Virus record (IMG/VR): IMGVR_UViG_3300032046_000001
Coordinates: 1-64,000 of that record
Length of the DNA stretch: 64,000 nt
Reading direction: 5' to 3' (one strand)
A program made the position numbers and the translations under genes. The notes below the pieces were generated by a model. That model searched no databases. It was not told the DNA's origin and saw only the letters and a list, made by a program, of their open reading frames with translations. This document shows, in pieces, positions 486 to 57,531 of this stretch; position 1 is the first letter of the stretch, and each line of letters starts with the position of its first letter.

Positions 486-1112
486 TCAATATTCCTTATA
501 AAAATGATTATAAATATGATTCCACGATTTTCCATTTTTTATATACGAAACCATTACCGTTGAAATATCATATAATTTTGATATTTCAATATTTTTAAAT
601 CCCAATTTAATCAACATGTGAATTTGATGTATTTGTTTTTCTATTAATTTTGAAGGTCTATTTTCTTTAAGTATTTCACTCAATTTATTTTTATGTTCTT
701 CTGATAATTTTTTATCTTTATGTGATTCACTCATTTTCTTTTTAGATTCTTCTGAAAAATATTTACCAATATGATGTAATTGTTGATGTTCTCCATGAGA
801 TATCAATTCGAGATTATTTAAAATATTATTTTCTTTTATTTCATCTTTATGATGAACATCACACTCTTCTGTTATTTCTCCAATAAAAGTTTCATACATT
901 AATCTATGAATTTTAAATGTTTTTGTTTTATTTTTTTTGTATAATTTGATATTAAAATAATATTTAATATCTTTATACTGTTTTAATATTTTTTCTTTTC
1001 CAAATTTTAATGATTTAACTCTACCTAAATTACTAATCATATAATCTGGATAATCTTTTATAATTTTCCAAACTTCATTTTCTAAATCTAAATTATTATA
1101 ATTATCACTCAT
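486..1112 (-). CDS. NUMOD4-HNH homing-type endonuclease with NUMOD3 and C-terminal HTH
   Basis: EVWKII..YPDYMISNLGRVKS (NUMOD4), HRL...DVHHKDEIKENNILNNLE..H (HNH), SEESKKKMSE (NUMOD3). Confidence 0.9.
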   Translation of the reverse strand: MSDNYNNLDLENEVWKIIKDYPDYMISNLGRVKSLKFGKEKILKQYKDIKYYFNIKLYKKNKTKTFKIHRLMYETFIGEITEECDVHHKDEIKENNILNNLELISHGEHQQLHHIGKYFSEESKKKMSESHKDKKLSEEHKNKLSEILKENRPSKLIEKQIHQIHMLIKLGFKNIEISKLYDISTVMVSYIKNGKSWNHIYNHFYKEY

Positions 1113-1211
1113 TTTTTAAATTCTCCAGTTTGAATTTTACCAGTAAATAAAATTATAAGAGAGCGGGATTACTGGTTATCCTTTTCGAGTGATCATCTCT
1201 ATCTCTCTTAT
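1113..1211 (-). ncRNA. Structured leader RNA element, copy A (three-way junction plus pseudoknot), upstream of an HNH gene
   Basis: Minus strand reads AUAAGAGAG AUA GAG-AUGAUCA-CUC GAAAA GGAU-AACCAGUA-AUCC CG CUCUCUUAU ... UACUGGU ... ACUGGAG ... AUG. The same architecture recurs at three other loci with compensatory changes. Confidence 0.75.
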
Positions 1212-8037: not shown

Positions 8038-10380
8038 TTATTCTAATTCGATTAAGGGATCATTTGATAAAATATCTTTTATCATTTCTTTCTTTTTTAC
8101 TTTTACAACACCACCAGTATGGAATGTTCGCATGATTGCCTGGGTATTAACTTCTCCCAAAATTTGTGATGCGATAATTCCTATAAATGGACTCTTATGA
8201 CGTTTCAAAAGATCGCCATAACAAGTATGACAGATTTTAGGTGATATACAATATATTGGTGTTCTTAGATGAATAACATCACCAATATTAAAATCACTTG
8301 GATTGAATGGAACAACCTTACCATTTTTAATAATATATCGTCCATTTAATCTACCGATCATATCACCGTCAAGTTTTATAGTGATTGTTCTACTGGTTCC
8401 GCAATCTTTCTTAAACAAATCAGCTTCAACTGGATTAAGAACATATGATAATTTTCTCGCCATGTATCCTGTTGTTGCAGTATTTAAAACTCGGTCAGCC
8501 AAACCTTTTCGTGCTCCAGGAGCAGCCTTGAAAAATTCAATTGGTGTTAGTCCTTCAGCGAATGAACCTTTGATGGGTTCGAGAATATTACCTTTAGTAT
8601 CAGCAATAACACCTTTAGCACACAAAATCTGAAGTGGTTGTGTCCAACCTTTACCGGCACCAGATTCAATTAGGTCATATAATCCAGTATTTTGTAGATG
8701 TTTTTCAAGAATAACTTTCATCTGTTGAAGAATATTATCGGCAGTCTCAGTATCAGCACCAGTTAATTTCTCTTTTAATTCATAAATTTCTTTCGGAACT
8801 TCAATATCGTCTAAGGTTATTGTTGGTGCAATAATTGTAGCAAATTTAAAACCCATTTTTGATAACTTGGAAACAGATTCAATAATAATTTCCTGGTCAT
8901 ACTTTTCAACCAATTTTGAAATTATTTTAGTTGCGATTTTTTTATTAACTACATCGTTAACAAATGGAAAATCTTTTGGTAACGCACTATTTAAAATTGC
9001 CTTTCCCATCGTTGTAGCTTCACCACGATATCTCACTGGAATATAAGGATCGACAGCATCATCCAGATCTTTTTCCGAAACAACAATTGGTGATCTAGAA
9101 TATGAAATATTTTTTGTCATCAAATATAAACCAGCATACATGTCTTTACTTAGAGCAAATACAAAAGATTTAGAAGAATCAGAAGCTTCAAGCCGCATCA
9201 TTCTTGTTTTAACTTCTTCTTGAGCTTCATCTGTCAATGGTGTATATATTGCCATTTGATCTCCATCAAAATCGGCATTAAAACCACCAACCTGTAAAAC
9301 ACAAATTTGAAGCGTATCACCTTCAACAAGAACTGGATGAAATGCTCTTACTGATGACATGTGTAAAACAGGATCTCGTTTACAAATTACTACTCGATCT
9401 TTCATTACCAATTCAGCTACATCCCAAAATATTTTATGTAATTTTGGTGGCAATTTATCACCAGCAACGATTGCTTTAATTATTCTTCTTATACTATCAA
9501 CAGATATTTCAGTTTTAATGAATTTTTTGATTTCACTTGATAATTCTTCTCTATTTATTCTGTTCGTATATAATAGAACGTGCATAATAAATGGTTCAAA
9601 TAAATTAACTGCGATACGGAATGGTACACCAACCTGATTAATTTTTAAATTTGGTCCAGGTGTAATAACCGCTCGTCCAGAAAAATCAATTCTTTTACCC
9701 AACATTTGACTTCTTATAAGTCCATTTTTCTTTTCAACTTTTGTTCTAATAAATTTATCATGTTCTACTATAGCTAATTGAAGTCCGTAAGAAAGAAGAT
9801 CAAATAAAATTCCAGAACCTCCAGAACTTCTAACTTGAATAGCTTTCCTGATTATCGATTGATAGACATCGTTAAGTTTGTCGATCATCCAGTTGCCATC
9901 TTCTTCTTGAAAACTTGGCCGAAAATCTGGAGGAATAATGGGAATTTTATCGATAAATAGAGTTCCATCCTTATAAGATTTATGAAGAAGATTTATAAAT
10001 TTTTCTCGTGTTTCTGTTTCTCCCCTGAATTTTATATCTGGAAATATTTCTATAAATTTTGATAAACCAGTTAATTCGCCATCAGAATCTTGAACCAAGT
10101 CACCATTCACTTTTAAAGTAAAATTTTCAGATGCTGAAATAAAAAGATCAATCTTTCTATTTAATTGAAGAATTATTTTTAAAGCGGATGGATGAATAAC
10201 TTTTGTGTGCAAATCTATATAGGAAAATGTCTTTCGTCGTTCTTGTGATTCTAAATTTCCAAAAATTCTTTCCGAAAATAATCCATCATTATTAAATTCG
10301 TTAGGTCTTGAAAAAATTTCGGCAGATGTAACTGGAGATAGACCTTTAGAAAATTTGTCTAAATCTAAAAATTTCAACAT
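8038..10380 (-). CDS. rpoC: RNA polymerase beta' subunit, N-terminal catalytic fragment
   Basis: GLFSERIFG, MLGKRIDFSGRAVI, FNADFDGDQM catalytic motif, ARKGLADRVLNTATTGYMARKL bridge helix, TQAIMRTFHTGG trigger loop. Confidence 0.97.
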   Translation of the reverse strand: MLKFLDLDKFSKGLSPVTSAEIFSRPNEFNNDGLFSERIFGNLESQERRKTFSYIDLHTKVIHPSALKIILQLNRKIDLFISASENFTLKVNGDLVQDSDGELTGLSKFIEIFPDIKFRGETETREKFINLLHKSYKDGTLFIDKIPIIPPDFRPSFQEEDGNWMIDKLNDVYQSIIRKAIQVRSSGGSGILFDLLSYGLQLAIVEHDKFIRTKVEKKNGLIRSQMLGKRIDFSGRAVITPGPNLKINQVGVPFRIAVNLFEPFIMHVLLYTNRINREELSSEIKKFIKTEISVDSIRRIIKAIVAGDKLPPKLHKIFWDVAELVMKDRVVICKRDPVLHMSSVRAFHPVLVEGDTLQICVLQVGGFNADFDGDQMAIYTPLTDEAQEEVKTRMMRLEASDSSKSFVFALSKDMYAGLYLMTKNISYSRSPIVVSEKDLDDAVDPYIPVRYRGEATTMGKAILNSALPKDFPFVNDVVNKKIATKIISKLVEKYDQEIIIESVSKLSKMGFKFATIIAPTITLDDIEVPKEIYELKEKLTGADTETADNILQQMKVILEKHLQNTGLYDLIESGAGKGWTQPLQILCAKGVIADTKGNILEPIKGSFAEGLTPIEFFKAAPGARKGLADRVLNTATTGYMARKLSYVLNPVEADLFKKDCGTSRTITIKLDGDMIGRLNGRYIIKNGKVVPFNPSDFNIGDVIHLRTPIYCISPKICHTCYGDLLKRHKSPFIGIIASQILGEVNTQAIMRTFHTGGVVKVKKKEMIKDILSNDPLIELE

Positions 10381-17874: not shown

Positions 17875-18506
17875 TATTCACCATCCAGTTTTATATGACA
17901 CCATATTTTTCCTAATTTTATTAATGAAATTGTTTGTCTACAAACTCCAAATATATTAGCGATTTCTGTCTGAGTTATTTTTAACTGTTTTATAATTGGA
18001 GAATTTGAAATTTGATATATTGTCTTAACTTGCCATTCTTCTAATTTTGAATTATTATTACTTTCTCCATTTTGAACTGAATTTTCACTCATTTTCTTTC
18101 TAGTTTTTTCTGAAGGGTGTTTTCCAAAAAGCACATGATTTTCACCTTTTGGATTATGATATATACTATGCTCTATTTTAGGCATTTTTTTTAAATTATT
18201 AATAAAATTATCTTCTTTATTTTCATTTATATGATGAACATCATAACCTTTTCCTAATTTTTCTTTGAAGGTTTCATAAACAAGATGATGAATTTTTTTA
18301 TTTAGTTTTTTATTTTTATTATATAATCTCAAACATAAATATTTCTGTTTTTTATATGGTTTTAATATGTTTCCATTTATCTTATTATACTTAAAACTTT
18401 TAATTCTACCAAAATTACTAACTTCATAATCTGGACAATCTTCTATAACTTTCCATATTTCATTTTCTAAATCATTAATATTTAAATTTTTATAAATTTC
18501 ACTCAT
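17874..18506 (-). CDS. NUMOD4-HNH homing-type endonuclease
   Basis: EIWKVIED.PDYEVSNFGRIKS; DVHHINENKEDNFINNL; C-terminal HTH ITQTEIANIFGV. Confidence 0.9.
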   Translation of the reverse strand: MSEIYKNLNINDLENEIWKVIEDCPDYEVSNFGRIKSFKYNKINGNILKPYKKQKYLCLRLYNKNKKLNKKIHHLVYETFKEKLGKGYDVHHINENKEDNFINNLKKMPKIEHSIYHNPKGENHVLFGKHPSEKTRKKMSENSVQNGESNNNSKLEEWQVKTIYQISNSPIIKQLKITQTEIANIFGVCRQTISLIKLGKIWCHIKLDGE

Positions 18507-18518
18507 ATTTTAAATTTC

Positions 18519-21467: not shown

Positions 21468-22451
21468 TTAGACAAGATATTTATCAAGTTTTTCCAGGGT
21501 GGTTGTTTCAGTAACAATCTTTCCAGGTTTTTTCATTAATTTAAAAAATGGACTAGATGACTTTTTAACATCTTCTAAATCGTCAAAAACTTTACCATAC
21601 TCAGAACCCAATGCACTATACATGAAATTATATTGAACCGTAGAACACAAACCTTGAAATTCTTTCATACAGAAGTATGCTCTCTTATTAACATCATCAC
21701 AGATAACAAACGAAGACCAACCTAAACTATATAATCTTCTTATATTCGCGGTCCTCTCTAAGAAACTATATCCAAGATCCATCATATTCAAAACAGTAAA
21801 AATATTGTCTTTATGTACTGTTCTTGCCATAATAACATCTTTCTTTGGATCACCACTTATAGTTAATTGGGTAAAAGGAAGATGTGTCCAACGTACAACT
21901 GCCCACATTGTTTTGAGAAATTTTCTTCCGAGAATGGATAGTCTTGATTGAAGGAAATTCATTGATTGATCTGACATGATTAAATCGATAAGAGCAGCAT
22001 CAGACTGAACAGGAAACGGAATTGTTTTAATACCAGCGATTCTTGTACCAGCAAAAGTATCAACTTTAATCCATGTAGGTTCTAAACTTACAGAACTAAA
22101 ACTTGGTGGTTCTACTTTAACATCAATTTTTACTGTCGCTTTTTCACCTTGAGATATTTTCTTATCTTTTTCTGGTGCAGCGGGCATATTAATAACAACA
22201 CTTGGTGGTTTCTTACCTTGTTCTAATATGACACCATCGTCACTTCTATGATCATTTGTCTCAGCTTCATGTAGTTTTAACATACCTTTCTGAAAGAATA
22301 ATGATCTTTTACCTCTTGCAAAATTATTCGCAGCTTTGACAATATCATCCATCTTATAAATTAACACAAACTTCTCAATTACTTTTGAAATACCCGGCAA
22401 AACATTTGCGGAGACATTACTAGATACCAACATTGGGTAAACCACAATCAT
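21468..22451 (-). CDS. Hypothetical protein, probably structural
   Basis: SD GAGGAGG inside the upstream endonuclease gene precedes MIVVYPM (ATG at 22451). Confidence 0.65.
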   Translation of the reverse strand: MIVVYPMLVSSNVSANVLPGISKVIEKFVLIYKMDDIVKAANNFARGKRSLFFQKGMLKLHEAETNDHRSDDGVILEQGKKPPSVVINMPAAPEKDKKISQGEKATVKIDVKVEPPSFSSVSLEPTWIKVDTFAGTRIAGIKTIPFPVQSDAALIDLIMSDQSMNFLQSRLSILGRKFLKTMWAVVRWTHLPFTQLTISGDPKKDVIMARTVHKDNIFTVLNMMDLGYSFLERTANIRRLYSLGWSSFVICDDVNKRAYFCMKEFQGLCSTVQYNFMYSALGSEYGKVFDDLEDVKKSSSPFFKLMKKPGKIVTETTTLEKLDKYLV

Positions 22452-23035
22452 CTTAAATCCTCCTCTATATGATTCCAATTCCTTTTATTTTTAATATTAG
22501 AAATTGTCAATCGACTAACTCCAAACATATCAGCTATTTCTTGTTGAGTTAATATTCCTTCTTTTAATAATAATTTTATTTGAATAACTTGTTCTTCTGT
22601 TAATTTATGATTTGGATGATTTTCTCCTTTGACATTATAATGATTTTTAGACATTAATTTTTTTGTTTTGTCAGAAAAATGTTTACCCAAATTTGGACTA
22701 TTATTTTTATTATTATGAAAACTATTATGTTCTAATTTTGGCATTAATTTTAAATTTTCTAAATTATTATTTTCTTTATCTCCATTAATATGATGAATAC
22801 ATTCATCATTCTTTAATTTATAATTATTAAAAGTTTCATAAACTAATCTATGAATATAATTTAAATTATATTCATTATTTTCTTTATATAGCTTTATATT
22901 ATAATACTCATTAATATTTTTTAATTTTTTTAATATTTTACCACATTTATACCTTTTAAAACTTTTAATTCTGCCTAAATTACTTATAAGGTAATCTCCA
23001 TTGTATCCATCGATTTCTTTCCAAGTTTCATTCAT
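22448..23035 (-). CDS. NUMOD4-HNH homing-type endonuclease
   Basis: ETWKEIDGYNGDYLISNLGRIKS; HRLVYETF; CIHHINGDKENNNLENL; HTH LTQQEIADMFGVSR. Confidence 0.9.
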   Translation of the reverse strand: MNETWKEIDGYNGDYLISNLGRIKSFKRYKCGKILKKLKNINEYYNIKLYKENNEYNLNYIHRLVYETFNNYKLKNDECIHHINGDKENNNLENLKLMPKLEHNSFHNNKNNSPNLGKHFSDKTKKLMSKNHYNVKGENHPNHKLTEEQVIQIKLLLKEGILTQQEIADMFGVSRLTISNIKNKRNWNHIEEDLR

Positions 23036-23047
23036 ACTATCTCCAAT

Positions 23048-25135: not shown

Positions 25136-25150
25136 TATTTTGTTCCCAAT
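25136..25150 (-). promoter_or_regulatory. Intergenic 15-mer ATTGGGAACAAAATA, copy 1 (candidate phage promoter)
   Basis: Identical 15-mer at 35253-35267 and 49760-49774; all three are at gene boundaries on the same strand. Confidence 0.55.
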
Positions 25151-34017: not shown

Positions 34018-34480
34018 TTTTTACAACATCCTCCCACGCCATTCTTGCAAGAGAATAAGCGTCGGCTAAATTGTCATCAGAGAACTCAATGCCAAATTTT
34101 TTATAAACCTGTAACAGCATCAAATTTTTCTTGGCATTACCACTACCAGTAATAAATTTTTTTAATACTTTTGGTTCGATAACTTTGAAATTTAAAGATT
34201 CTTTCTTCATCATGATTCTAATATAATAATGAAGAGCACCCAATTGAATAAGGGTATTTCCCTTCGAATTAAATGATACTCCTTCTATATTAATAATAGA
34301 ATCTTTTTGAGTATATTTTTGAATTTCTTTCCATATACTTATAAAACGAGCTTCAATTTCTTCAGTACTTTTGGTATTAAATAATTTTGATTGTATTATA
34401 TTGCCTCTTTCATCGAGAACAATAATTCCAGTTCCGGTTAGCGAAGGATCTATGCCTATAAATATTTTTTTATCCAACAT
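33998..34480 (-). CDS. ruvC: RuvC-like Holliday junction resolvase
   Basis: IGIDPSLTGTG, IEG, LKKFITGSGNAKK, DDNLADAYSLA; likely ATG at 34480. Confidence 0.9.
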   Translation of the reverse strand: MLDKKIFIGIDPSLTGTGIIVLDERGNIIQSKLFNTKSTEEIEARFISIWKEIQKYTQKDSIINIEGVSFNSKGNTLIQLGALHYYIRIMMKKESLNFKVIEPKVLKKFITGSGNAKKNLMLLQVYKKFGIEFSDDNLADAYSLARMAWEDVVKNDKIFD

Positions 34481-35219
34481 GTGACCAACTCCTTCCAATT
34501 TTTATATATGAAATTGTTCTTCGACTAACTCCGAACATATCAGCTATTTCTTGTTGAGTTAATATTCCATCTTTCAATAATAATTTTATTTGAATAACTT
34601 TTTGTTCGGTTAATTTTGAATTTGGATGTTTTTCACCTCTAAAATCAGCATGGTTTTCACTCAATTTCTTTTTGTGTTCTTCTGAAAGTGAAAATCCTTT
34701 CTTTTTTTCACTTATTTTATTTTTTGATTCTTCTGAGTGGTGTTTTCCAAGCATTGATTTTGGATGTTTTTCACCTCTAAAATCAGCATGGTTTTCACTC
34801 AATTTCTTTTTGTGTTCTTCTGATTTAGGTCGTCCTTTTCTGTCACAACTCATTTTCTTTTTCGATTCGTCAGAAAAGATATAACCACTTATTCCATCAC
34901 CACCATCAGTTATATTAACAAGAGATCCAGTTTTTAAATTAATTCTACCAATTTCATTAATTAATTGTTTTTCAAATTTAAATGAATTTTCTTCATTTAA
35001 ATTTTCATATAATTTAAAAACAATTGGTTCTAATCCAGACTGTTTAATTTTATTTATTTTATTTTTAAATAATCTACATCGACTATTGTCTAATTCTTTG
35101 TATCTATTATCTTTTCCTTTACCAATATATATTGGTTCAAAAATAAAACATACATCATTATAACAATATCTTCCAGATTTTCTTGGATCTAAATAAATAT
35201 AAATGTAAAATTTGTTCAT
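34470..35219 (-). CDS. GIY-YIG-like homing-type endonuclease with NUMOD3 repeats and HTH
   Basis: FYIYIYLDPR...PIYIGKGKDNR...E..LI..IGR...LVNITDGGDG; NUMOD3 repeats. Confidence 0.85.
   Translation of the reverse strand: MNKFYIYIYLDPRKSGRYCYNDVCFIFEPIYIGKGKDNRYKELDNSRCRLFKNKINKIKQSGLEPIVFKLYENLNEENSFKFEKQLINEIGRINLKTGSLVNITDGGDGISGYIFSDESKKKMSCDRKGRPKSEEHKKKLSENHADFRGEKHPKSMLGKHHSEESKNKISEKKKGFSLSEEHKKKLSENHADFRGEKHPNSKLTEQKVIQIKLLLKDGILTQQEIADMFGVSRRTISYIKIGRSWSHVG
34621..34823. repeat. Exact 65-bp intragenic direct repeat (duplicated NUMOD3-like module)
   Basis: 34621-34685 is identical to 34759-34823 and encodes SEEHKKKLSENHADFRGEKHP twice. Confidence 0.9.
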
Positions 35220-35252
35220 TAAATAAACTTCTCCAATTAATAATCATCTTTT

Positions 35253-35267
35253 TATTTTGTTCCCAAT
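35253..35267 (-). promoter_or_regulatory. Intergenic 15-mer ATTGGGAACAAAATA, copy 2
   Basis: Identical to the copies at 25136 and 49760. Confidence 0.55.
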
Positions 35268-35906: not shown

Positions 35907-36131
35907 CTATCCTGGATAATAACTCGTAAATACTTCATTAATTTCCTTTTCCTCAAAATCATAATCTTCTGGGAAATTATATAAATCATCACATGAGTAA
36001 CCATTATCATTAATTTTTAATTTTTCTTCAATATATTTTTTTACTTGTTCAAACGCATGTTCTTTTGATTCAGCTACCACATAAAAAGAATGTGTTTCAT
36101 ATTCATAAATTCTCCAACAGTATACCTTCAT
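35907..36131 (-). CDS. Hypothetical protein
   Basis: SD AAGGAG; FYVVAESKEHA. Confidence 0.65.
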   Translation of the reverse strand: MKVYCWRIYEYETHSFYVVAESKEHAFEQVKKYIEEKLKINDNGYSCDDLYNFPEDYDFEEKEINEVFTSYYPG

Positions 36132-36161
36132 TATTCGATCTCCTTTAAAATTATTAAGTAA

Positions 36162-36881
36162 TTAACCCTTATCAAATGTGACATTGGGTAAACTACCAAG
36201 AGTCATCTTATCAACAAGATCTCTCTTCATTTCCTTACCTTCTTCTAATATTTCAGCTCCAAGAGGAATTTCACCAAACGGGGTTCTTAAATTTCCACCA
36301 CCATATCTTTGACGAATACGACCAATCAATATCATAATATCAGCAAGAGCAAGTTGACAAAATAATAATTGAAATTCATTTGGAATTTTTCTCAGATCTT
36401 CAGGATGGTTGCGTTCGTACTCAATAGTTATATTCCTAACATTAATTGGTGTTGGTGAGATGCGTACAATATTTGGATGGAAGAACTCGATCGTTCTATC
36501 GTAATTAGAGAATGTCTTCAACATACCCGCAATTTCGGTATCAAGTGCCCAACTTCTTAGTTCTCCTTGTGTAAATGGACCAAGAGGAGGAAATCCATTA
36601 ATTAAGTAATCACTCATATCTCCATACATGTTTTTAACATTGAGTATTTCCAATCCTTCTGGATCTTCAATATAGTACTCATTTCCACGTCCTGGTACTT
36701 GTGCGCTTTCAAGTAATGGATTCAAATATACTTTGTTTGTGTCAGGAAAATATCGTGAGAATTCACGAAGGGTATAATTTTTAAAATAATCGATAATTTT
36801 AGAATCATCTAATTCCAGAACCATGAATGAAAATCCTAAATTATCTTTTATATACTCTAAGACGCGCGTCTGAGTTAACAA
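36162..36881 (-). CDS. Neck/head-completion protein (T4 gp13-like)
   Basis: VLEYIKDNLG..LELDD..I..F..Y N-terminus and GRIRQRY.G..GEI.LG..I.EEG C-terminus; TTG start at 36881 after SD AAGGAG. Confidence 0.6.
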   Translation of the reverse strand: MLTQTRVLEYIKDNLGFSFMVLELDDSKIIDYFKNYTLREFSRYFPDTNKVYLNPLLESAQVPGRGNEYYIEDPEGLEILNVKNMYGDMSDYLINGFPPLGPFTQGELRSWALDTEIAGMLKTFSNYDRTIEFFHPNIVRISPTPINVRNITIEYERNHPEDLRKIPNEFQLLFCQLALADIMILIGRIRQRYGGGNLRTPFGEIPLGAEILEEGKEMKRDLVDKMTLGSLPNVTFDKG

Positions 36882-37567
36882 TGGATGTCTCCTTCTATTA
36901 ATGACCAACCTTTCCCAGATTTTATTCTAGAAACTGTTGATATACTAATGTTAAATATATTACTAATTTCTTTTTGAGTTATCTTTAACTGTTTTATAAT
37001 AGGAGAATTTGTAATTTTGTAAATAACTACAACTTGCCATTCTTTTAATTTAGAATTCGAATTATTTTCTCCTACATTTTTTTGACTTATTTTTAATTTT
37101 GTTTTGTTAGAAAGAAATTTTCCAATTCGTTTATTTCTCATTATTTCTTTTGATTTATTCGAATGTTTTTTTCCAAACATTGGATTCGACTCATCTTTAT
37201 TACCATTAATCATATGAAACACTCTATGTTCTTTTTTAGTCATTAAATTTAAATTTTCATAATAATTATCTTCTTTATTTTCATTAATATGATGAATACA
37301 CTCGTTTGATTTTAATTTATAATTATTAAAAATTTCAAATAGTAAAATATGAATTGACTTATTTTTAACTTTTCGATTTTTACACAAAACAATATAAAAA
37401 TATCCACTACTATCTTTATTTTGTCTTAATATTCTTCCTTCTTTGTATCTTTTAAAACTTTTAACTCTACCAAGATTACTGACTTGATAATCTGGATAAT
37501 CTTCTATAGTTTTCCAAACTTCATTTTCTAAATCACTAATGTCTAAATTTTCAAATATTTTAATCAT
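36875..37567 (-). CDS. NUMOD4-HNH homing-type endonuclease
   Basis: EVWKTIEDYPDYQVSNLGRVKS; CIHHINENKEDN..ENL; NPMFGKKHS; likely ATG at 37567. Confidence 0.9.
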   Translation of the reverse strand: MIKIFENLDISDLENEVWKTIEDYPDYQVSNLGRVKSFKRYKEGRILRQNKDSSGYFYIVLCKNRKVKNKSIHILLFEIFNNYKLKSNECIHHINENKEDNYYENLNLMTKKEHRVFHMINGNKDESNPMFGKKHSNKSKEIMRNKRIGKFLSNKTKLKISQKNVGENNSNSKLKEWQVVVIYKITNSPIIKQLKITQKEISNIFNISISTVSRIKSGKGWSLIEGDIHC

Positions 37568-37661
37568 TTTATAATCGCCTGTCAATTATTTCCTGAAATT
37601 AATTTAAAGAGAGCAGGAAGTTCAGGATTACTTCTTTTCGACGGCCAATCTATCTCTCTTT
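37568..37661 (-). ncRNA. Structured leader RNA element, copy B
   Basis: AAAGAGAG AUA GA-UUGGCCG-UC GAAAA GAAG-UAAUCCUGAA-CUUC CUG CUCUCUUU ... UUCAGGA ... ACAGG ... AUG. Confidence 0.75.
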
Positions 37662-37666
37662 TTTAT

Positions 37667-38002
37667 TTAAATGCTATTCCATAATACCATTGCTCTTTCT
37701 TTTCGTGGAACTTCTTGTTTTTCGCGTTCTATATCTAATTCGAGTTTCTTTTTTAATGGTGTTATTTCATCTATTTTTTTACCACATCTTAAACAAATTT
37801 TTTTGATATATCGTTTATCAAAATCTATAGGATCTTTTATTAATCTACAAGGTGGGGATTCTGGAGGCATAGGACGACCGTCAGTTATTTTTTTACAGTC
37901 TTCAAGATATCTTTGATGATGTTTTATATTACTTATTAATTGTACTTCTGTAATTCTTTCTAATATTTCCCAATCATGAAAACCTAATTTACACCAGTTC
38001 AT
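37667..38002 (-). CDS. Hypothetical protein with zinc-finger-like motif
   Basis: CKLGFHDW...CLRCGK. Confidence 0.65.
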   Translation of the reverse strand: MNWCKLGFHDWEILERITEVQLISNIKHHQRYLEDCKKITDGRPMPPESPPCRLIKDPIDFDKRYIKKICLRCGKKIDEITPLKKKLELDIEREKQEVPRKERAMVLWNSI

Positions 38003-38882
38003 TATCTAATATATCTCTTGTCTCACTTCGAATCGTATAATCATTATCATTTTTAGATTCATAAACTTGAAGGAGTCCATAAGTCAAATCAAATAATCTT
38101 CTAATCTTGGCATATACTTCTTTAGTATCACCTAAGTCTCTTCGAAAAACATCTTTATCTAATTTTTCATTAGTCTTGAGATCCCACAAACGACAAGTAT
38201 CAGGTGATATTTCATCAGCTAATATAAGATGTTGATCTTCAGTTCTGTGACCAAATTCGAGTTTCATATCGACCAGTAAAATTCCATGTTTTTCAAAAAA
38301 TTCTTTGATGTGAATATTGATAAGTTTAGTTAAATTTTTTATTTTGAATAAAATAATATCAACTTTACACTTATATATTGGAAGATATTCTTTTTCAGTT
38401 GGAACCTTTCTTATTAATCCCAATTTTCTAATATGGTCTTCTGTAATCATTGGATCGTCCAATTCATCACTTTTATAATAATACTCTATAATAGGTTCAA
38501 CTATTGGTGTTCCTTCTTCTATATCAAGTCTTTTTGATAAACTTCCAGCAACAACATTTCGAACAACAACTTCAATTGGAAGTATATTGACTCTATTAAC
38601 TAACATCTCCCTATCATTTAATTTAGTAATAAAATGAGTACTGATGTTATTACTGTGCAAATGAGAAAATAATATAGATGAAGAACTATTATTACAAATA
38701 CCCTTATCTTCAATTACAGCCTTCTTCTTTCCATTGAAAGCTGTTGCGTCATCATTAAATCGTTGTATTAAAATATTAGGATCATTAGTTTCAAATAATG
38801 TCTTTGCCTTACCAGAATAAAGTTCTTTTCCTCTTTTAATATGACCCCATTTAGGATCAGTATAATCAAATAAATCGTTCAT
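37989..38882 (-). CDS. purC: SAICAR synthetase
   Basis: LYSGKAK, DDATAFNG, PIEVVVRNVVAGS, YKSDELDDP, LVDMKLEFG, LADEISPDTCRLWD, DKDVFR; ATG at 38882 with SD GAGGAG. Confidence 0.95.
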   Translation of the reverse strand: MNDLFDYTDPKWGHIKRGKELYSGKAKTLFETNDPNILIQRFNDDATAFNGKKKAVIEDKGICNNSSSSILFSHLHSNNISTHFITKLNDREMLVNRVNILPIEVVVRNVVAGSLSKRLDIEEGTPIVEPIIEYYYKSDELDDPMITEDHIRKLGLIRKVPTEKEYLPIYKCKVDIILFKIKNLTKLINIHIKEFFEKHGILLVDMKLEFGHRTEDQHLILADEISPDTCRLWDLKTNEKLDKDVFRRDLGDTKEVYAKIRRLFDLTYGLLQVYESKNDNDYTIRSETRDILDNELV

Positions 38883-38889
38883 ATTCTCC

Positions 38890-40035
38890 TCAAAAATTCT
38901 CAAAATCAAAATCACTTCTATTAGAAAATAAGATATCAACATCTTCTTCTAATACTTCTACATTCCCTTTTCTTAGTGCCTTGTACATTGTATTTGACTC
39001 GGTGAAATTATCATTATTCAAAATATTAGTCACATAGTTTCTTTTAGCGATAATTTCTGTATTCGGTGGATCTTTAAAAACTTCGGATATTATTTTAAAC
39101 CACACCAATCTTAAATTATTAGATATAATTGAAGTTTTATTTTCTTCTTCAATTATTTTTGATATAGTTTTATCATTACTATTTTTTATAAATATTTTTT
39201 TCTTATTGAGAACATTATGATATAAATCTTCCATACTACCAACACACTCAATTAGACCACTGATTATTTTTGGAATGGTTTTAGGACCAATACTTTTAAT
39301 CTTAGGAACATCATCAGTTTTATCACCAAGTACAGCCATAACCAATGGAAAATATTTATCTGGTATGTCAACTTTAAATTTTAAATATGTTGACATAATT
39401 TCACCTTTTTTAACTATCTTTATTTTCTGACCTGATTTACAAAATTGATATATGTCACTTCCGAGAGAAATAGTCTGAAATAAATCATGATCATTTGAAT
39501 AAATTATATTACATGAATCTTGTAATGTAATCAATGAATTACTTATAAGATAGTATGGAATAAAATCAGCTTCGAAATTTTGTAACAAAAATAATTTACA
39601 ACTTGGAATTTTATTTATAACTTTTTCGGATAATTTCAAATTATTTTGAATAGTAGAAAAAAATACATCTTTGTCTATTTGATTAAGATTAAATAAATCA
39701 CCAATTTTACGATTACTTTTATAATTTTTATCAATATTCGTATGATAATATGAATGTCCCATTTCTGCGAAAAATATGAAATTAATATCGAGACTACGTT
39801 TTATCGCATATTTTTTATGGAATGAAAGAAAAGATATCAAAGACTCAAAAATAGAAGTATCAATAAATTTAGAATATTTTGTAGATTCTACAATATTAAC
39901 AACAAATTCTTCCAAATAGAGACAATTTAAGATGTTACGTAAATCTATAAATAAATTTAAAATTTTATAATTATTAGAATATGATAAAATGTTGTCTAAA
40001 ATCGAATATGTGGGGTAATAAGAAATGACGTTCAT
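38890..40035 (-). CDS. 5'-3' exonuclease / T4 RNase H-like (FEN family)
   Basis: FID, YKSNR, FEADFI, SNDHDLFQ, LGDKTDDVPKIKSIGPKT; ATG at 40035 coupled to the upstream mini-ORF. Confidence 0.85.
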   Translation of the reverse strand: MNVISYYPTYSILDNILSYSNNYKILNLFIDLRNILNCLYLEEFVVNIVESTKYSKFIDTSIFESLISFLSFHKKYAIKRSLDINFIFFAEMGHSYYHTNIDKNYKSNRKIGDLFNLNQIDKDVFFSTIQNNLKLSEKVINKIPSCKLFLLQNFEADFIPYYLISNSLITLQDSCNIIYSNDHDLFQTISLGSDIYQFCKSGQKIKIVKKGEIMSTYLKFKVDIPDKYFPLVMAVLGDKTDDVPKIKSIGPKTIPKIISGLIECVGSMEDLYHNVLNKKKIFIKNSNDKTISKIIEEENKTSIISNNLRLVWFKIISEVFKDPPNTEIIAKRNYVTNILNNDNFTESNTMYKALRKGNVEVLEEDVDILFSNRSDFDFENF

Positions 40036-40085
40036 AACTGTCCTGACCATCGAGGATCTAAATAAGTATAAATATAATAATTCAT
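40032..40085 (-). pseudogene. 17-codon remnant of a GIY-YIG-like endonuclease
   Basis: MNYYIYTYLDPRWSGQL* versus MNKFYIYIYLDPRKSGRY of 34470..35219; intact SD AGGAG. Confidence 0.75.
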
Positions 40086-40178
40086 AAATAATCTCCTGTT
40101 AATTATTTCCTGAAAAGAAAAAGAGAGAAGGAAGTTCAGGATTACTTCTTTTTCGAGCTTAAGTCTCTATCTCTCTTA
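40086..40178 (-). ncRNA. Structured leader RNA element, copy C
   Basis: AAGAGAG AUA GAG-ACUUAAG-CUC GAAAAA GAAG-UAAUCCUGAA-CUUC CUU CUCUCUU ... UUCAGGA ... ACAGGAG ... AUG. Confidence 0.75.
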
Positions 40179-40185
40179 TTATCCA

Positions 40186-42753: not shown

Positions 42754-43404
42754 TCATATAACATTGTACCATGATCTTCCATTTTTAATATTTGAAATAG
42801 TACTCTGATCAATATTATATATTTTTGATATATCTTTATTTTTAAATTTCAATTTTAATAACATTTTAATTTGGATAATTTGTTTAATAACTAATTTATG
42901 ATTTGTATTATTTTCTCCTATAAATTTTCCATTAAGTGATTCACTTATTCTTTGTTTTGTTATATCAGATCTATGTTTTCCAAAATTTGGATTATTTTCT
43001 CCTTTCATGTGTTCGCTAATTTTTTGTTTGTGTCTATCTGATAATTTTCTTCCTATTGTGTTTTTATTATTAATTTTATGTAAACTATTATGATCTGATT
43101 TTGTTTTCTTTTCTAAATTTTTCCAATAATTATTTTTTATATTTTCATCTTTGTGATGGACACACTCATCCTGTTTTAATTTATCATTATAGAAAGTTTC
43201 ATAAACTAATATATGAATTTTTTTACTTTTACCATGATCATTTCTATATAAACTAATCTGAAAATAACCATGAGAATCTGTACATAATTTTAATATTTTT
43301 TCTTTATTAAATTTCAGTGACTTTATTTTTCCAAAGTCACTGATCAAATAATCTGAATATTCATTAATTATTTTCCATGTTTCTTTATTCTTCATCTTCA
43401 TCAT
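42754..43404 (-). CDS. NUMOD4-HNH homing-type endonuclease
   Basis: ETWKIINEYSDYLISDFGKIKS; CVHHKDENIKNNYWKNLE; NPNFGKHRS; HTH. Confidence 0.88.
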   Translation of the reverse strand: MMKMKNKETWKIINEYSDYLISDFGKIKSLKFNKEKILKLCTDSHGYFQISLYRNDHGKSKKIHILVYETFYNDKLKQDECVHHKDENIKNNYWKNLEKKTKSDHNSLHKINNKNTIGRKLSDRHKQKISEHMKGENNPNFGKHRSDITKQRISESLNGKFIGENNTNHKLVIKQIIQIKMLLKLKFKNKDISKIYNIDQSTISNIKNGRSWYNVI

Positions 43405-43663
43405 CTTCGGTTATTTCATCATCATAACCATCTTGAAATTCACTGTCTTCATCAACATTTTCATATCTCTCAACCAATTCTAAGATATCAATACCAGTAT
43501 GTGTAGGTATTGTCCCACTCCCAGAACAAATTGGACATGTCGTAGTTGGTTCTGGTTCATCGCCGTTCCAACCATTAAGATCCCATTCTAAAAATTTCGG
43601 ATTTATAACTTCACATGTCCCATTACAAAAAGGACATACTGTTTCTAAATAATCTTCTTCCAT
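43385..43663 (-). CDS. Small DnaJ-type zinc-finger protein with acidic tail
   Basis: CPFCNGTC and CPICSGSG. Confidence 0.7.
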   Translation of the reverse strand: MEEDYLETVCPFCNGTCEVINPKFLEWDLNGWNGDEPEPTTTCPICSGSGTIPTHTGIDILELVERYENVDEDSEFQDGYDDEITEDDEDEE

Positions 43664-45313: not shown

Positions 45314-46297
45314 CTATAGATTCAAATAATCTAAAATCTCATTTATATTTGTTGAATTTATTCCAATTTTACCAACTACAATACCAGCCACTATATTCGC
45401 CAATTCAACTGATTCTTCTAATGACAATATTTCTGATAAATATGATAATGTAAGTGTTGATATTACTGTATCACCCGCACCACTTACATCATAAACTTCT
45501 TTAGCTTTAGTTGGTAAACTTATCATTTTGTGTCCATCGTTTCTTATAATAGATATTCCATCTTTTCCCCGTGTAACTATAAGATAATCAAGATTTAATT
45601 TATGATATAATTTCATTCCAGCTTTATATATTTTATCTTCAGTATCAACAACCATCTTAGAAATTTTTGATAGTTCTTTTAAATTGGGTGTTAAAAAATT
45701 GGCATTTTTATATTTAAGATAATTAGATCCTTTAGGATCTATAAAAATTAATTTATTATTTTTTTTACACGTATTAATTATTTTCTGAGTCAATTTAAAA
45801 GTCAAAACTCCTTTTAAATAATCAGAAATAATAACTGCCGAACATTTGTCAATATGACTATTGACAAATTCTAATATTAATTTTTCTAATTTAGAATCTA
45901 TTTCTCTCGTTGATTCTTTATCAAATCTAATTAATTGATAATTTTCTGAAAAAATTCTATTTTTTATTGTTGTTGGTCTGTCATAATCTATAAAAATACC
46001 ATCAATTGAACACACATTCTTTAATTTATTTAATACAAATTCTCCATTTGAATCATTTCCGATTATTCCACATGGAATAACATTTCCACCTAATGATAGT
46101 ATATTAGATATAACATTTCCACTTCCACCAATCATTTTAAAAGTTTTTTCAATATCCACAATAGGAACTGGAAATTCTGGAGAAATGCGTTCTACTTTAC
46201 CAATAATATATTTATCTACCATAATATCTCCAATAACTAATATATTATGATAATTAAATTTAGAAAATATATTTTTAATTTTTTCTTTACTGAACAT
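45314..46297 (-). CDS. rfaE: D-glycero-D-manno-heptose-7-phosphate kinase (HldE/RfaE domain I, PfkB family)
   Basis: VIGDIMVDKY..G.VERISPEFPVPIV, GGSGNV, RPTTIKNR, ISDYLKG, DPKG, TPNLKE, VYDVSGAGDTV. Confidence 0.92.
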   Translation of the reverse strand: MFSKEKIKNIFSKFNYHNILVIGDIMVDKYIIGKVERISPEFPVPIVDIEKTFKMIGGSGNVISNILSLGGNVIPCGIIGNDSNGEFVLNKLKNVCSIDGIFIDYDRPTTIKNRIFSENYQLIRFDKESTREIDSKLEKLILEFVNSHIDKCSAVIISDYLKGVLTFKLTQKIINTCKKNNKLIFIDPKGSNYLKYKNANFLTPNLKELSKISKMVVDTEDKIYKAGMKLYHKLNLDYLIVTRGKDGISIIRNDGHKMISLPTKAKEVYDVSGAGDTVISTLTLSYLSEILSLEESVELANIVAGIVVGKIGINSTNINEILDYLNL

Positions 46298-46901
46298 GAT
46301 ACCAGATTTTTCCTCTTTTTATATCCGAAATCGTTATTCTACTAACTCCAAACATGTCAGCTATTTCTTGTTGGGTTAATATTCCTTCTTTTAATAATAA
46401 TTTTATTTGAATTACTTGTTCTTCTGTTAATTTGTGTTGTGGATGATTTTCACCTTTATAATTTAATTTTCCACTTTTAAACTCTTCTTTTCTCGTTTTA
46501 CTTATTTTAATTTTTGTTTCATTTAATAATATTTTTCCTTTGTTATGATATTTTGAGTGTCTTGAATGTGGTTCAGATTTCAAATTATCAATAAAATTAT
46601 TTTCTTTATCTTCGTTTGTATGATGAACATCATAATTTTTTTCTAATTTTTTGTTGAAAGTTTCATAAACTAATCGATGAATAACTTTAGTTTTAGATTT
46701 CTTATTCTTATTATGTAAATCAACATAAAAATATCCCTTATGATTTCTACACTGTTTTAATATTCTACAATCAGTACCTTTCCATTTTATAAAACTTTTA
46801 ATTCTCCCAAGATTACTAACTTGATATTCTGGATATTCTTCAATAGTTTTCCAAACTTCATTTTCTAAATCATTAATATCTAAATTTTCATATATTTTCA
46901 T
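46287..46901 (-). CDS. NUMOD4-HNH homing-type endonuclease
   Basis: EVWKTIEEYPEYQVSNLGRIKS; HRLVYETF; DVHHTNEDKENNFIDNL; ATG at 46901 after SD AAGGAG. Confidence 0.9.
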   Translation of the reverse strand: MKIYENLDINDLENEVWKTIEEYPEYQVSNLGRIKSFIKWKGTDCRILKQCRNHKGYFYVDLHNKNKKSKTKVIHRLVYETFNKKLEKNYDVHHTNEDKENNFIDNLKSEPHSRHSKYHNKGKILLNETKIKISKTRKEEFKSGKLNYKGENHPQHKLTEEQVIQIKLLLKEGILTQQEIADMFGVSRITISDIKRGKIWYHVQ

Positions 46902-46987
46902 TATAACTCCTTGTATTATTTTCCTTGAATGATTAAAGAGAGCAGGTAGCAAGGTCTACTTTTCGAGCGATCGACTCTATCTCTCTT
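46902..46987 (-). ncRNA. Structured leader RNA element, copy D
   Basis: AAGAGAG AUA GAG-UCGAUCG-CUC GAAAA GUAG-ACCUUG-CUAC CUG CUCUCUU ... CAAGG ... CAAGGAG ... AUG. Confidence 0.75.
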
Positions 46988-49759: not shown

Positions 49760-49774
49760 TATTTTGTTCCCAAT
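49760..49774 (-). promoter_or_regulatory. Intergenic 15-mer ATTGGGAACAAAATA, copy 3
   Basis: Identical to the copies at 25136 and 35253. Confidence 0.55.
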
Positions 49775-57528: not shown

Positions 57529-57531
57529 AAA

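What the first reader, a model, noticed from the sequence alone, without database searches (positions are those of the whole stretch)
1113..1211. Four-copy structured RNA leader dedicated to homing-type endonuclease genes (copies at 1113-1211, 37568-37661, 40086-40178, 46902-46987)
Seen in sequence: on the coding (minus) strand each copy reads P1 AAGAGAG - AUA - P2 hairpin with a 7-nt loop - GAAAA - P3 hairpin - C(U)G or CUU - P1' CUCUCUU, then a short AU-rich linker, a sequence complementary to the P3 loop, the SD and the AUG. P3 covaries (GGAU/AUCC, GAAG/CUUC twice, GUAG/CUAC). The pseudoknot also covaries (ACCAGUA/UACUGGU, UCCUGAA/UUCAGGA twice, CCUUG/CAAGG), while the junction nucleotides are nearly invariant. 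Three copies precede NUMOD4-HNH genes and one precedes a GIY-YIG remnant; I found none before other genes. Established: T4 homing endonucleases such as I-TevI are held down by simple SD-sequestering hairpins. Inference: this is a more elaborate cis-regulatory or endonuclease-partner RNA that travels with the mobile gene. I do not recognise it as a known riboswitch or ribozyme class.
Basis: partly seen in the sequence, partly recalled or inferred. Interest (0 to 1): 0.92.

Follow-up and report, generated by a model that had tools for sequence, protein, structure and literature searches.

The report
Known int-alpA RNA leading homing endonucleases
The four repeats are real copies of a small folded RNA that sits in front of selfish nuclease genes in a giant phage, but it belongs to an RNA family already catalogued in Rfam (int-alpA, function unknown), and its anatomy suggests a switch that hides or exposes the ribosome-binding site.

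Summary
Four minus-strand copies share a three-way junction: P1, AUA, P2, GAAAA, P3, CUG/CUU/CG, P1'. A downstream segment pairs with the P3 loop.

About 41 distinct relatives from viral and metagenome contigs give strong covariation: 98.8% of cells are paired and 13 of 15 pairs show double changes.

The claim of novelty fails. The element is Rfam RF02996, int-alpA RNA. Copy 2 scores 36.6 bits against a threshold of 35.8. Copies 4 and 3 score 35.3 and 34.8. A relative scores 40.1. The default Rfam scan of the whole window missed all of them.

Family-wide it is not dedicated to homing endonucleases. In E. coli it follows an integrase gene and precedes an unknown protein. Elsewhere it precedes Dam methylases, Rha, HNH and other genes. 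In this window, 5 of 8 NUMOD4-HNH genes and the intact GIY-YIG gene lack it.

- The P3 loop is complementary to two sites, a decoy and the 5' half of the Shine-Dalgarno. The two pairings have nearly equal predicted stability, and both covary with the loop in two clades.
- The P2 loop is usually self-complementary (6-nt palindromes, or GACG), which suggests RNA dimerisation.
- The leader and its HNH gene are absent together from a related phage contig.

Best reading: a cis-acting, two-state translational switch whose input is unknown.

The parts
1157..1209 (-). Copy 1 three-way junction. P1 1209-1203 / 1163-1157; J1/2 AUA; P2 1199-1187 with loop AUGAUCA (palindrome UGAUCA); J2/3 GAAAA; P3 1181-1166 with loop AACCAGUA; J3/1 CG.
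   Evidence: R1 model 52.2 bits. No RF02996 hit at E<=10.
1139..1146 (-). Copy 1 decoy UUACUGGU, complementary to the P3 loop.
   Evidence: Duplex -10.2 kcal/mol.
1125..1129 (-). Copy 1 second loop-complementary site ACUGG, running into the SD (ACUGGAG).
   Evidence: Duplex -7.2 kcal/mol.
486..1112 (-). NUMOD4-HNH homing endonuclease gene behind copy 1.
   Evidence: Pfam NUMOD4, HNH_3, NUMOD3.
37607..37660 (-). Copy 2 three-way junction. P2 loop UGGCC (GGCC palindrome); P3 loop AAUCCUGA; J3/1 CUG.
   Evidence: RF02996 36.6 bits, threshold 35.8. R1 66.9 bits.
37591..37597 (-). Copy 2 decoy UUCAGGA.
37578..37581 (-). Copy 2 second site CAGG at the SD. GAUUA further on can pair with the 5' part of the loop.
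36875..37567 (-). NUMOD4-HNH gene behind copy 2 (ATG at 37567).
   Evidence: Pfam.
36855..37674 (-). Indel unit holding leader copy 2 plus its HNH gene. It is absent from a related phage contig.
   Evidence: read laying: run X4 record 17 covers 36060-36764 and 37675-39254 and skips 36855-37674.
40121..40177 (-). Copy 3 three-way junction. P2 loop ACUUAAG (palindrome CUUAAG); J2/3 GAAAAA; P3 loop AAUCCUGA; J3/1 CUU.
   Evidence: RF02996 34.8 bits. R1 76.5 bits.
40094..40114 (-). Copy 3 decoy UUCAGGA (40114-40108), a 9-nt spacer, and the second site CAGGA at the SD (40098-40094).
40032..40085 (-). 17-codon GIY-YIG remnant. Its TGA overlaps the ATG (40035) of the 5'-3' exonuclease-like ORF 38893-40035.
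46936..46987 (-). Copy 4 three-way junction. P2 loop UCGAUCG (palindrome CGAUCG); P3 loop ACCUUG; J3/1 CUG.
   Evidence: RF02996 35.3 bits. R1 51.7 bits.
46909..46927 (-). Copy 4 decoy CAAGG (46927-46923), a 9-nt spacer, and the second site CAAGG within the SD CAAGGAG (46913-46909).
46287..46901 (-). NUMOD4-HNH gene behind copy 4.
   Evidence: Pfam.

Best explanation
The four elements are members of the known int-alpA RNA family (Rfam RF02996), used here as portable 5' leaders of homing endonuclease gene cassettes in a jumbo phage.

The RNA folds into a compact three-way junction. Its P3 hairpin loop is an anti-Shine-Dalgarno sequence with two mutually exclusive partners downstream. One is a decoy 4-15 nt after P1'. 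The other is the 5' half of the gene's own SD.
- Loop:SD pairing blocks ribosome binding (OFF).
- Loop:decoy pairing forms a pseudoknot and leaves the SD free (ON).

The two duplexes have nearly equal predicted stability. The decoy hangs on a very short tether. So the conformation of the conserved junction (UA / GAAAA / CUG) should decide which partner the loop can reach.

Shown: the structure, the two complementarities and their covariation, the fixed position before an ORF, and co-mobility with the gene for copy 2.

Inferred: that translation is the output; which state is the default (probably ON, with the decoy paired); and what flips the switch. My leading candidate for the input is homodimerisation through the self-complementary P2 loop. 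Melting of P1 by ribosomes terminating on the upstream gene is another. Neither has been tested.
For: Structure. On 40 distinct sequences, 98.8% of cells are paired and 13 of 15 pairs have changes on both sides. 0 of 500 shuffles reach this, and slid controls give at most 65% paired. P1 itself covaries: UAAGGG/CCCUUA, GUGUGG/CCACAC, CAGGG/CCCUG.

Family membership. RF02996 hits of 40.1, 36.6, 35.3 and 34.8 bits cover the whole 71-position model. Reciprocally, my model built only from phage copies finds E. coli int-alpA at 32.6 bits, E 2e-5.

Dual pairing, AT-rich clade. 35 of 41 have a Watson-Crick match of 5 nt or more between loop and decoy region (shuffles: mean 5, max 13). 32 of 41 have one to the SD region (mean 3.7, max 10). 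There are at least 12 different loop/decoy/SD triplets.

Dual pairing, independent GC-rich clade with 29 distinct loops. 23 of 42 for the decoy (mean 3.2, max 9) and 30 of 42 for the SD region (mean 4.5, max 11). E. coli copies show the same layout.

Energies. Mean predicted duplex energy is -7.1 kcal/mol for the decoy and -6.9 for the SD. The difference is usually 0.4-3 kcal/mol.

Position. The start codon lies 24-47 nt after P1' on the same strand in all instances.

P2 loop. 14 of 27 distinct P2 hairpins carry a 6-nt palindrome (shuffles: mean 1.6, max 6 of 2000). 11 different palindromes occur. None has a second copy within 200 nt. Other members carry GACG, a loop known to self-pair in MoMuLV RNA (PMC7357161).

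Co-mobility.
Against: No experiment or RNA-level data exist: only DNA runs hold this sequence.

The decoy is on average slightly stronger and closer than the SD site. The predicted default therefore leaves the SD free, and the element might hardly repress at all.

Rfam files the family as a gene (sRNA), not as cis-regulatory.

Five NUMOD4-HNH paralogues and an intact GIY-YIG gene in the same window work without the leader.

The P2-loop palindrome signal is weaker in the GC-rich clade: 14 of 23 have 4 nt or more, against a shuffle mean of 6.5 and a maximum of 15.

The search patterns fixed parts of the motif, so the apparent invariance of P1 (AT clade) and P3 (GC clade) is partly an artefact of sampling.
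Confidence: 0.55

Rival explanations
1. A trans-acting small RNA, as Rfam classifies int-alpA. The junction RNA is released or separately terminated, and its P3 loop pairs with SD regions of target mRNAs in trans. Targets could include its own gene and paralogous copies that share the same loop.
For: Rfam type 'Gene; sRNA'. Several copies in one genome share identical loops and sites, for example copies 2 and 3. The linker after P1' is T-rich in the AT clade, at 56% T.
Against: Each copy's loop covaries with sites 10-45 nt downstream on the same strand, always just before an ORF. Linkers in the GC clade are short (4-12 nt) and not U-rich, so a terminator after P1' is not a family feature. The pseudoknot partner must be transcribed on the same molecule for its covariation to make sense.
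Confidence: 0.1
2. A riboswitch. The invariant junction (UA, GAAAA, CUG) forms a pocket for a small molecule or ion, and binding fixes the P3 orientation and so the loop's choice of partner.
For: The junction letters are nearly invariant from E. coli islands to jumbo phages, while all helices vary. Two balanced alternative pairings resemble an expression platform.
Against: Downstream genes share no metabolic theme: nucleases, methylases, Rha, integrative-element genes and unknowns. With about 11 junction nucleotides the core is very small. No similarity to any riboswitch family appears in Rfam searches at E<=10.
Confidence: 0.1
3. A self-cleaving ribozyme or processing signal that cuts the nuclease mRNA out of the polycistronic transcript. 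This would resemble the lariat-capping ribozyme ahead of I-DirI (recalled from memory, not checked here).
For: The size and layout, a three-way junction with conserved junction letters, variable helices and a loop-tail pseudoknot, recall small ribozymes. CGAAA after P2 resembles the hammerhead C11.1-G12-A13-A14. The element is tied to selfish genes.
Against: The hammerhead core CUGANGA is absent, since J1/2 is (N)UA. No ribozyme family matches at E<=10. Cleavage would not explain why the loop matches the SD.
Confidence: 0.07
4. An insulator or terminator at the cassette border. A stable fold right after the upstream stop codon stops read-through transcription, or stops ribosomes from re-initiating, so the inserted gene does not disturb its neighbours and they do not disturb it.
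For: P1 begins 5-8 nt after the upstream stop codon for copies 2-4 and within 3-18 nt in many GC-clade members. The linker is T-rich in the AT clade. The leader is part of the inserted unit.
Against: This does not explain the three-way covariation of loop, decoy and SD. The U-tract is not conserved across the family. The terminator scan finds nothing at the copies. Copy 1 lies 55 nt from the upstream stop.
Confidence: 0.1
5. A protein-binding operator. The nuclease itself, or a common host or phage RNA-binding protein, recognises the conserved junction and sets the switch.
For: A conserved junction with variable helices is typical of protein-recognised RNAs. At least 11 copies in one genome could be controlled together.
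Against: The same junction is kept in front of unrelated proteins in unrelated hosts, so autoregulation by the encoded protein is unlikely. No candidate protein co-occurs.
Confidence: 0.08

Closest known systems
int-alpA RNA motif, Rfam RF02996 (I recall it as one of the 224 motifs of Weinberg et al. 2017, PMC5737381; the held main text does not mention it)
   Same: It has the same three-way junction, the same junction letters (UA, GAAAA, CUG), a GACG-type or self-complementary P2 loop, a pyrimidine-rich P3 loop, and a downstream AGG-containing partner. The whole 71-position model aligns at 34.8-40.1 bits.
   Different: The window copies are AT-rich, with a homopurine/homopyrimidine P1 and longer palindromic P2 loops. 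They sit before homing endonuclease genes in a jumbo phage, not between int and alpA. Three of the four score just under or below the curated threshold. Rfam lists the family as an sRNA gene, whereas the anatomy found here points to a cis-acting leader.
RBS-sequestering hairpins of T4-type homing endonuclease genes (I-TevI, mobE, seg genes; reviewed in PMC2988022; mechanism from my own knowledge)
   Same: A cis RNA structure masks the ribosome-binding site of a phage homing endonuclease gene.
   Different: Those are simple local hairpins, relieved by transcripts that start inside the hairpin. Here a hairpin loop within a three-way junction pairs at a distance with the SD and competes with a built-in decoy. 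No internal promoter was detected.
Anti-SD / anti-anti-SD rearrangements in type I toxin mRNAs (e.g. dinQ, PMC5066626)
   Same: Mutually exclusive pairings decide whether the SD of a harmful gene is accessible.
   Different: Those switches are triggered by 5' processing and use long-range helices. They are unrelated in sequence and fold.
SD-sequestering pseudoknot riboswitches (preQ1-II, SAM-II; from my own knowledge)
   Same: A loop-to-3'-tail pseudoknot includes or competes for the SD.
   Different: No ligand is known or implied by gene context. No Rfam similarity was found. Those RNAs have no decoy duplicate of the SD flank.
Palindromic kissing loops of retroviral dimer initiation sites (HIV-1 DIS, MoMuLV GACG loops; PMC7357161)
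   Same: A 6-nt palindrome preceded by unpaired A, or a GACG tetraloop, sits at the tip of a short hairpin.
   Different: Dimerisation of int-alpA RNA has not been demonstrated, and the context is a bacterial or phage mRNA leader.
HEARO / IscB omega-RNA (HNH endonuclease-associated RNA; from my own knowledge)
   Same: A structured RNA is encoded next to an HNH nuclease gene.
   Different: HEARO is a guide RNA several hundred nucleotides long that is bound by the nuclease. No Rfam hit to it was found, and the size and fold are unrelated.

Membership tests
Rfam RF02996 int-alpA RNA | Covariance-model score at or above the curated gathering score (35.8 bits). | tested here: met
   Copy 2 (37592-37660) scores 36.6 bits over model positions 1-71. 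Relative L009:7496-7566 scores 40.1 bits.
Rfam RF02996 int-alpA RNA | The same score criterion for copies 1, 3 and 4. | tested here: inconclusive
   Copy 4 scores 35.3 bits and copy 3 scores 34.8 bits, with E about 1e-6 but just under threshold. Copy 1 has no hit at E<=10. Copy 1 is tied to the others by model R1 at 52.2 bits.
Rfam RF02996 int-alpA RNA | Three-way junction with J1/2 (N)UA, J2/3 GAAAA and J3/1 CUG. | tested here: met
   Compare the alignment to the Rfam consensus.
Rfam RF02996 int-alpA RNA | A conserved 3' tail segment (uaAgGG in the consensus) complementary to the P3 loop. | tested here: met
Rfam RF02996 int-alpA RNA | Reciprocal detection: a model built only from the phage copies finds bona fide int-alpA RNAs. 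| tested here: met
   R1 finds the E. coli copy L347:2493-2546 at 32.6 bits, E 2e-5, and nine GC-clade members.
Rfam RF02996 int-alpA RNA | The name-giving context between an integrase gene and alpA. | tested here: not met
   In the window the flanks are phage metabolic and replication genes plus nuclease genes. The int...alpA context was confirmed only for E. coli members. Context is not part of the Rfam model.
Hammerhead ribozyme | Core CUGANGA between stems I and II, GAAA between II and III, and a UH cleavage site. | tested here: not met
   J1/2 is AUA or CUA and J3/1 is CUG. No hammerhead hit at E<=10.
Group I intron carrying a homing endonuclease ORF | Inserted in a split host gene, with intron core helices around the ORF. 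| tested here: not met
   The flanking ORFs are unrelated complete genes (SAICAR synthetase, pfkB kinase, 5'-3' exonuclease). No intron family hit appeared. The empty-site contig removes only the leader, the ORF and about 20 nt.
HEARO / IscB omega-RNA | A match to the Rfam HEARO model, with a guide RNA several hundred nucleotides long next to an IscB-type HNH gene (family features recalled from memory). | tested here: not met
   No hit. The downstream proteins are NUMOD4-HNH_3 homing endonucleases of about 200 aa.
Ligand-sensing riboswitch | Specific binding of a small molecule that changes the fold. | not testable with these tools
   Indirect evidence only: no shared metabolic theme among downstream genes.

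The most novel reading that the evidence does not exclude
int-alpA RNA is an RNA-only dosage or conformation sensor carried by selfish and accessory gene cassettes. Homodimerisation through the self-complementary P2 loop, or melting of P1 by ribosomes finishing the upstream gene, re-orients the three-way junction. The short-tethered decoy then loses the anti-SD loop, and the loop moves to the SD. Translation of a potentially harmful gene would thus be shut off as transcripts accumulate, without any protein or metabolite.
Probability: 0.15. Interest if true: 0.8.

Novelty: new member of a known kind. Interest (0 to 1): 0.42.

Why it matters
int-alpA is a widespread orphan RNA. More than 118 loci matched one narrow pattern in viral contigs. 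BLAST matches to the Rfam consensus occur in 219 of 5,426 complete E. coli genomes, of which four were inspected and confirmed. Its function is unknown.

The comparison gives a concrete, cheap-to-test model: an anti-SD loop with a built-in decoy, and possible RNA dimerisation. It argues that the family is a cis-acting leader of mobile accessory genes rather than an sRNA.

It also shows that a default Rfam scan can miss sub-threshold, AT-rich members. Apparent novelty in phage genomes therefore needs a permissive re-scan.

For phage biology, it adds a portable regulatory module to the known ways that homing endonuclease genes are kept in check.

Tried and rejected
- **Default Rfam scan.** The gathering-mode scan of the whole window returned nothing. 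A first permissive scan around copy 1 also found nothing relevant. These nearly led to a false 'novel' verdict. Permissive scans of short stretches around other copies found RF02996.
- **Cultured phages.** Megablast and blastn against cultured phage records gave no true match to the region or the motif.
- **Bacterial genomes.** The genome contigs pattern scan gave 9 loci. None passed the structural filter, so they are probably chance.
- **HNH relatives.** Among the 80 best NUMOD4-HNH relatives in viral contigs, only the two from the same jumbo phage carry the motif. The link to HNH genes is therefore lineage-restricted.
- **Promoters and terminators.** The sigma-70 promoter scan was not enriched (25 found, 26.4 expected) and no terminator lies at the copies. 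The idea of a late promoter inside the linker was dropped.
- **Intrinsic terminator.** P1 plus a U-tract as a terminator was rejected as a family feature, because GC-clade linkers are short and not U-rich.
- **P1 triple helix.** A triple helix on the homopurine P1 was rejected because P1 is not homopurine in other members.
- **Other folds.** Hammerhead and group I intron readings were rejected (see the membership test).
- **RNA evidence.** Only DNA runs hold the sequence, so there are no transcript ends.
- **Literature.** Searches found no paper on the function of int-alpA RNA or on an RNA leader of homing endonucleases. The supplement of the discovery paper is not held.
- **E. coli downstream proteins.** They have no hit in Pfam, PHROGs, PADLOC or NCBIfam.

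Full report
**1. What is in the sequence**

Each copy has this order: P1 (AAGAGAG), AUA, a 3-bp P2 hairpin, GAAAA (GAAAAA in copy 3), a 4-5-bp P3 hairpin, CG/CUG/CUU, and P1' (CUCUCUU). After P1' come a 6-10-nt A/U-rich linker, a 5-8-nt segment complementary to the P3 loop, a 9-nt spacer, the SD and the ATG.

The 12-mer AAGAGAGATAGA occurs exactly four times in the window. A gapped core pattern occurs 4 times against 0.02 expected.

Three copies precede NUMOD4+HNH_3 genes. Copy 3 precedes a 17-codon stump whose sequence matches the N-terminus of full-length GIY-YIG genes found behind other copies.

**2. It is a conserved, covarying structure**

Pattern scans of viral and metagenome contigs were followed by a structural filter and a covariance model (R1, built from seven gap-free relatives). 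Together they gave 42 matches, 40 of them distinct.

On that alignment 98.8% of pair cells are standard pairs. 13 of 15 pairs show changes on both sides. No shuffle out of 500 reaches the observed values, and sliding the partners by 1-3 columns drops pairing to 42-65%.

P1, which looked invariant, covaries in members found with looser patterns: UAAGGG/CCCUUA, GUGUGG/CCACAC, AGAUAG/CUAUCU and CAGGG/CCCUG.

The window is part of a 312-kb viral contig, IMGVR_UViG_3300032046_000001, which carries at least 11 copies. It also encodes a multisubunit RNA-polymerase beta'-like protein.

**3. It is a known family**

The default Rfam scan of the whole window found nothing. Neither did a permissive scan around copy 1.

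Permissive scans of short stretches around other copies matched RF02996, int-alpA RNA, over the full 71-position model:
- relative L009: 40.1 bits, against a gathering score of 35.8;
- copy 2: 36.6 bits;
- copy 4: 35.3 bits;
- copy 3: 34.8 bits.

The Rfam consensus has the same layout: P1, UA, P2 with a gAcgu loop, GAAAA, P3 with a CCuU loop, CU, P1', a U-rich stretch, then uaAgGG.

The reverse test also works. R1, built only from AT-rich phage copies, finds an E. coli int-alpA RNA at 32.6 bits (E 2e-5) and nine members of a GC-rich clade.

Rfam types the family as 'Gene; sRNA'. I found no paper on its function.

**4. Gene context across the family**

In the AT-rich clade the downstream genes are as follows:
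- NUMOD4-HNH: 17 of 34;
- GIY-YIG: at least four by Pfam;
- long proteins with a DUF4379 zinc finger: 10, some also with CapR or DUF2726 domains. I read their C-terminal motif as a PD-(D/E)XK-type nuclease.

That makes three unrelated nuclease types.

The link is not general. BLAST of the Rfam consensus finds matches in 219 of 5,426 complete E. coli genomes. In the four loci I inspected, the RNA lies 15-35 nt after the stop of a tyrosine integrase gene. It lies about 25 nt before a variable 293-321 aa protein with no hit in four profile libraries, and an AlpA regulator follows.

In a GC-rich clade from viral contigs the downstream genes include DUF6387, Dam, HNH, Rha, other methyltransferases and many unknowns.

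Among the 80 closest NUMOD4-HNH relatives in viral contigs, only the two from this same phage have the motif. Inside the window, five further NUMOD4-HNH genes and an intact GIY-YIG gene have no leader.

So every copy here precedes a nuclease gene or its remnant, but most nuclease genes do without it. Family-wide it accompanies accessory or mobile genes of many kinds.

**5. The leader moves with the gene**

Contigs of four other metagenome runs were laid on 36000-41000. One 2.7-kb contig of a related phage (run X4) covers 36060-36764 and 37675-39254 and skips 36855-37674.

The skipped 820 nt hold leader copy 2, its HNH gene and about 20 nt beyond the stop codon. The flanking genes are unrelated and complete. 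This is therefore a free-standing cassette, not an intron.

Other joints in the same table link a copy-3-like leader to a copy-2-like HNH gene. Locus L023 combines the P2 of copy 3 with the P3 of copy 1. The modules are evidently reshuffled among copies.

**6. New anatomical points**

(a) Two partners for the P3 loop. The loop matches the decoy, and it also matches the nucleotides that run into the SD.

| Copy or locus | Loop | Decoy | SD site |
|---|---|---|---|
| Copy 1 | AACCAGUA | UUACUGGU | ACUGGAG |
| Copy 4 | ACCUUG | CAAGG | CAAGGAG |
| L122 | CAACGUCAA | UUGACG | UUGACGAGGGG |

In the AT clade, 35 of 41 have a 5-nt or longer match in the decoy zone (shuffled loops: mean 5, max 13 in 1000). 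32 of 41 have one in the SD zone (mean 3.7, max 10). At least 12 different triplets occur.

In the GC clade, with 29 distinct loops, the figures are 23 of 42 (mean 3.2, max 9) and 30 of 42 (mean 4.5, max 11). E. coli copies show the same layout.

Part of the matching segment lies outside what 16S rRNA would pair with (the 16S 3' end recalled from memory). Its covariation therefore points to pairing with the loop.

Predicted duplex energies are close: mean -7.1 kcal/mol for the decoy and -6.9 for the SD, usually 0.4-3 kcal/mol apart.

(b) A self-complementary P2 loop. 14 of 27 distinct P2 hairpins in the AT clade carry a 6-nt palindrome (shuffles: mean 1.6, max 6 in 2000). Eleven different palindromes occur. 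Each sits at the 3' side of a 7-8-nt loop behind one or two unpaired A.

No second copy of the palindrome lies within 200 nt, so an intramolecular partner is unlikely. P3 loops show no such bias.

Other members, including the four E. coli copies examined, carry GACG. That loop is documented to form a two-base-pair kissing homodimer in MoMuLV RNA. Six-nucleotide palindromic loops drive HIV-1 and oskar RNA dimerisation (PMC7357161).

In the GC clade the signal is weaker: 14 of 23 have 4 nt or more, against a shuffle mean of 6.5 and a maximum of 15.

**7. How it most likely works**

Shown so far are the fold, the two mutually exclusive loop pairings, the constant placement before an ORF, and co-mobility. 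From these I infer a cis-acting translational switch. The loop on the SD blocks initiation. The loop on the decoy frees the SD.

The decoy is tethered to P1' by only 4-15 nt. It can reach the loop only if P3 folds back along P1. The SD site has a longer tether and is less dependent on geometry.

Anything that changes the junction could therefore move the loop from decoy to SD. Candidates are dimerisation through P2, melting of P1 by a ribosome terminating 5-8 nt upstream (copies 2-4), or a bound factor.

The default state is probably ON, for three reasons. The decoy is transcribed first. It is slightly more stable. And copy 3 is retained in front of a gene stump that is translationally coupled to a 5'-3' exonuclease gene.

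These steps are inference, and I put about 0.55 on the switch model as a whole. The rivals each explain part of the anatomy, but none explains the three-way covariation as directly. They are a trans sRNA, a riboswitch, a ribozyme or processing site, an insulator or terminator, and a protein operator.

**8. Verdict**

It is wrong on novelty and on exclusivity.

The element is a divergent, AT-rich subgroup of the catalogued int-alpA family. What remains of interest is the testable mechanism for an orphan RNA family, and the caution that default Rfam filtering missed it.

Noticed in passing
window 40032-40085 and 38893-40035 (minus strand): Leader copy 3 is intact although its GIY-YIG gene is reduced to 17 codons. 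The stump's TGA overlaps the ATG (ATGA) of a 5'-3' exonuclease-like gene. The leader may therefore now govern that gene through translational coupling.
   Followed up: partly
window 489-1115, 17877-18509, 22451-23047, 36878-37585, 42757-43410, 46290-46955 (minus strand); 57529-58218, 60377-60946 (plus strand); 34473-35243 (minus strand): The 64-kb window holds eight NUMOD4-HNH paralogues and one intact GIY-YIG gene, an unusually dense load of homing endonuclease genes. Only three of them carry the leader.
   Followed up: partly
5-25 nt upstream of P1 in L013:8171, L022, L023, L135, L157, L164, L166, L221; window 35258-35264, 49765-49771, 25141-25147 (minus strand): A conserved box GGGAACAAA(A/U)U lies just upstream of many leader copies. 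In the window, GGGAACA sits in intergenic spots before other genes, including the leaderless GIY-YIG gene. It may be a promoter of the phage's own RNA polymerase. The resemblance to AACA-type promoters of phage AR9 is from memory only.
   Followed up: partly
window about 36859-36870 (minus strand): A GC-rich palindrome, AGACGCGCGUCU, lies directly after the stop codon of the copy-2 HNH gene, at the 3' edge of the indel unit. It could be a hairpin marking the cassette end.
   Followed up: no
window 8038-10380 (minus strand): A multisubunit RNA polymerase beta'-like ORF is 24-28% identical to phage and bacterial RpoC-like proteins. The contig is a 312-kb jumbo phage from a sediment metagenome with no close cultured relative.
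   Followed up: partly
window 37989-38942 and 45314-46297 (minus strand): The phage encodes a SAICAR synthetase (purC-like) and a pfkB-family sugar or nucleoside kinase. Both are auxiliary nucleotide-metabolism genes lying next to endonuclease cassettes.
   Followed up: no
L347:2582-3535, L348:2583-3506, L349:2082-2963, L350:2083-3048 (E. coli islands next to yicC): The gene behind the E. coli int-alpA RNA is a variable protein of 293-321 aa. The two products compared share only a weakly similar N-terminus. Those two have no hit in Pfam, PHROGs, PADLOC or NCBIfam. It is an unexplored variable gene of these integrative elements.
   Followed up: partly
Group-2 loci L002, L008, L009, L011, L015, L020 (upstream of P1): Copies that precede the DUF4379 zinc-finger proteins share a further conserved upstream stretch, UUAACRCAA...GGUAGUNGGUAAUAAC. 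It is either the end of a conserved upstream gene or another signal.
   Followed up: no
window copies 1-4: spacers 1138-1130, 37590-37582, 40107-40099, 46922-46914: The spacer between the decoy and the SD-proximal site is exactly 9 nt and A-rich in all four window copies.
   Followed up: no
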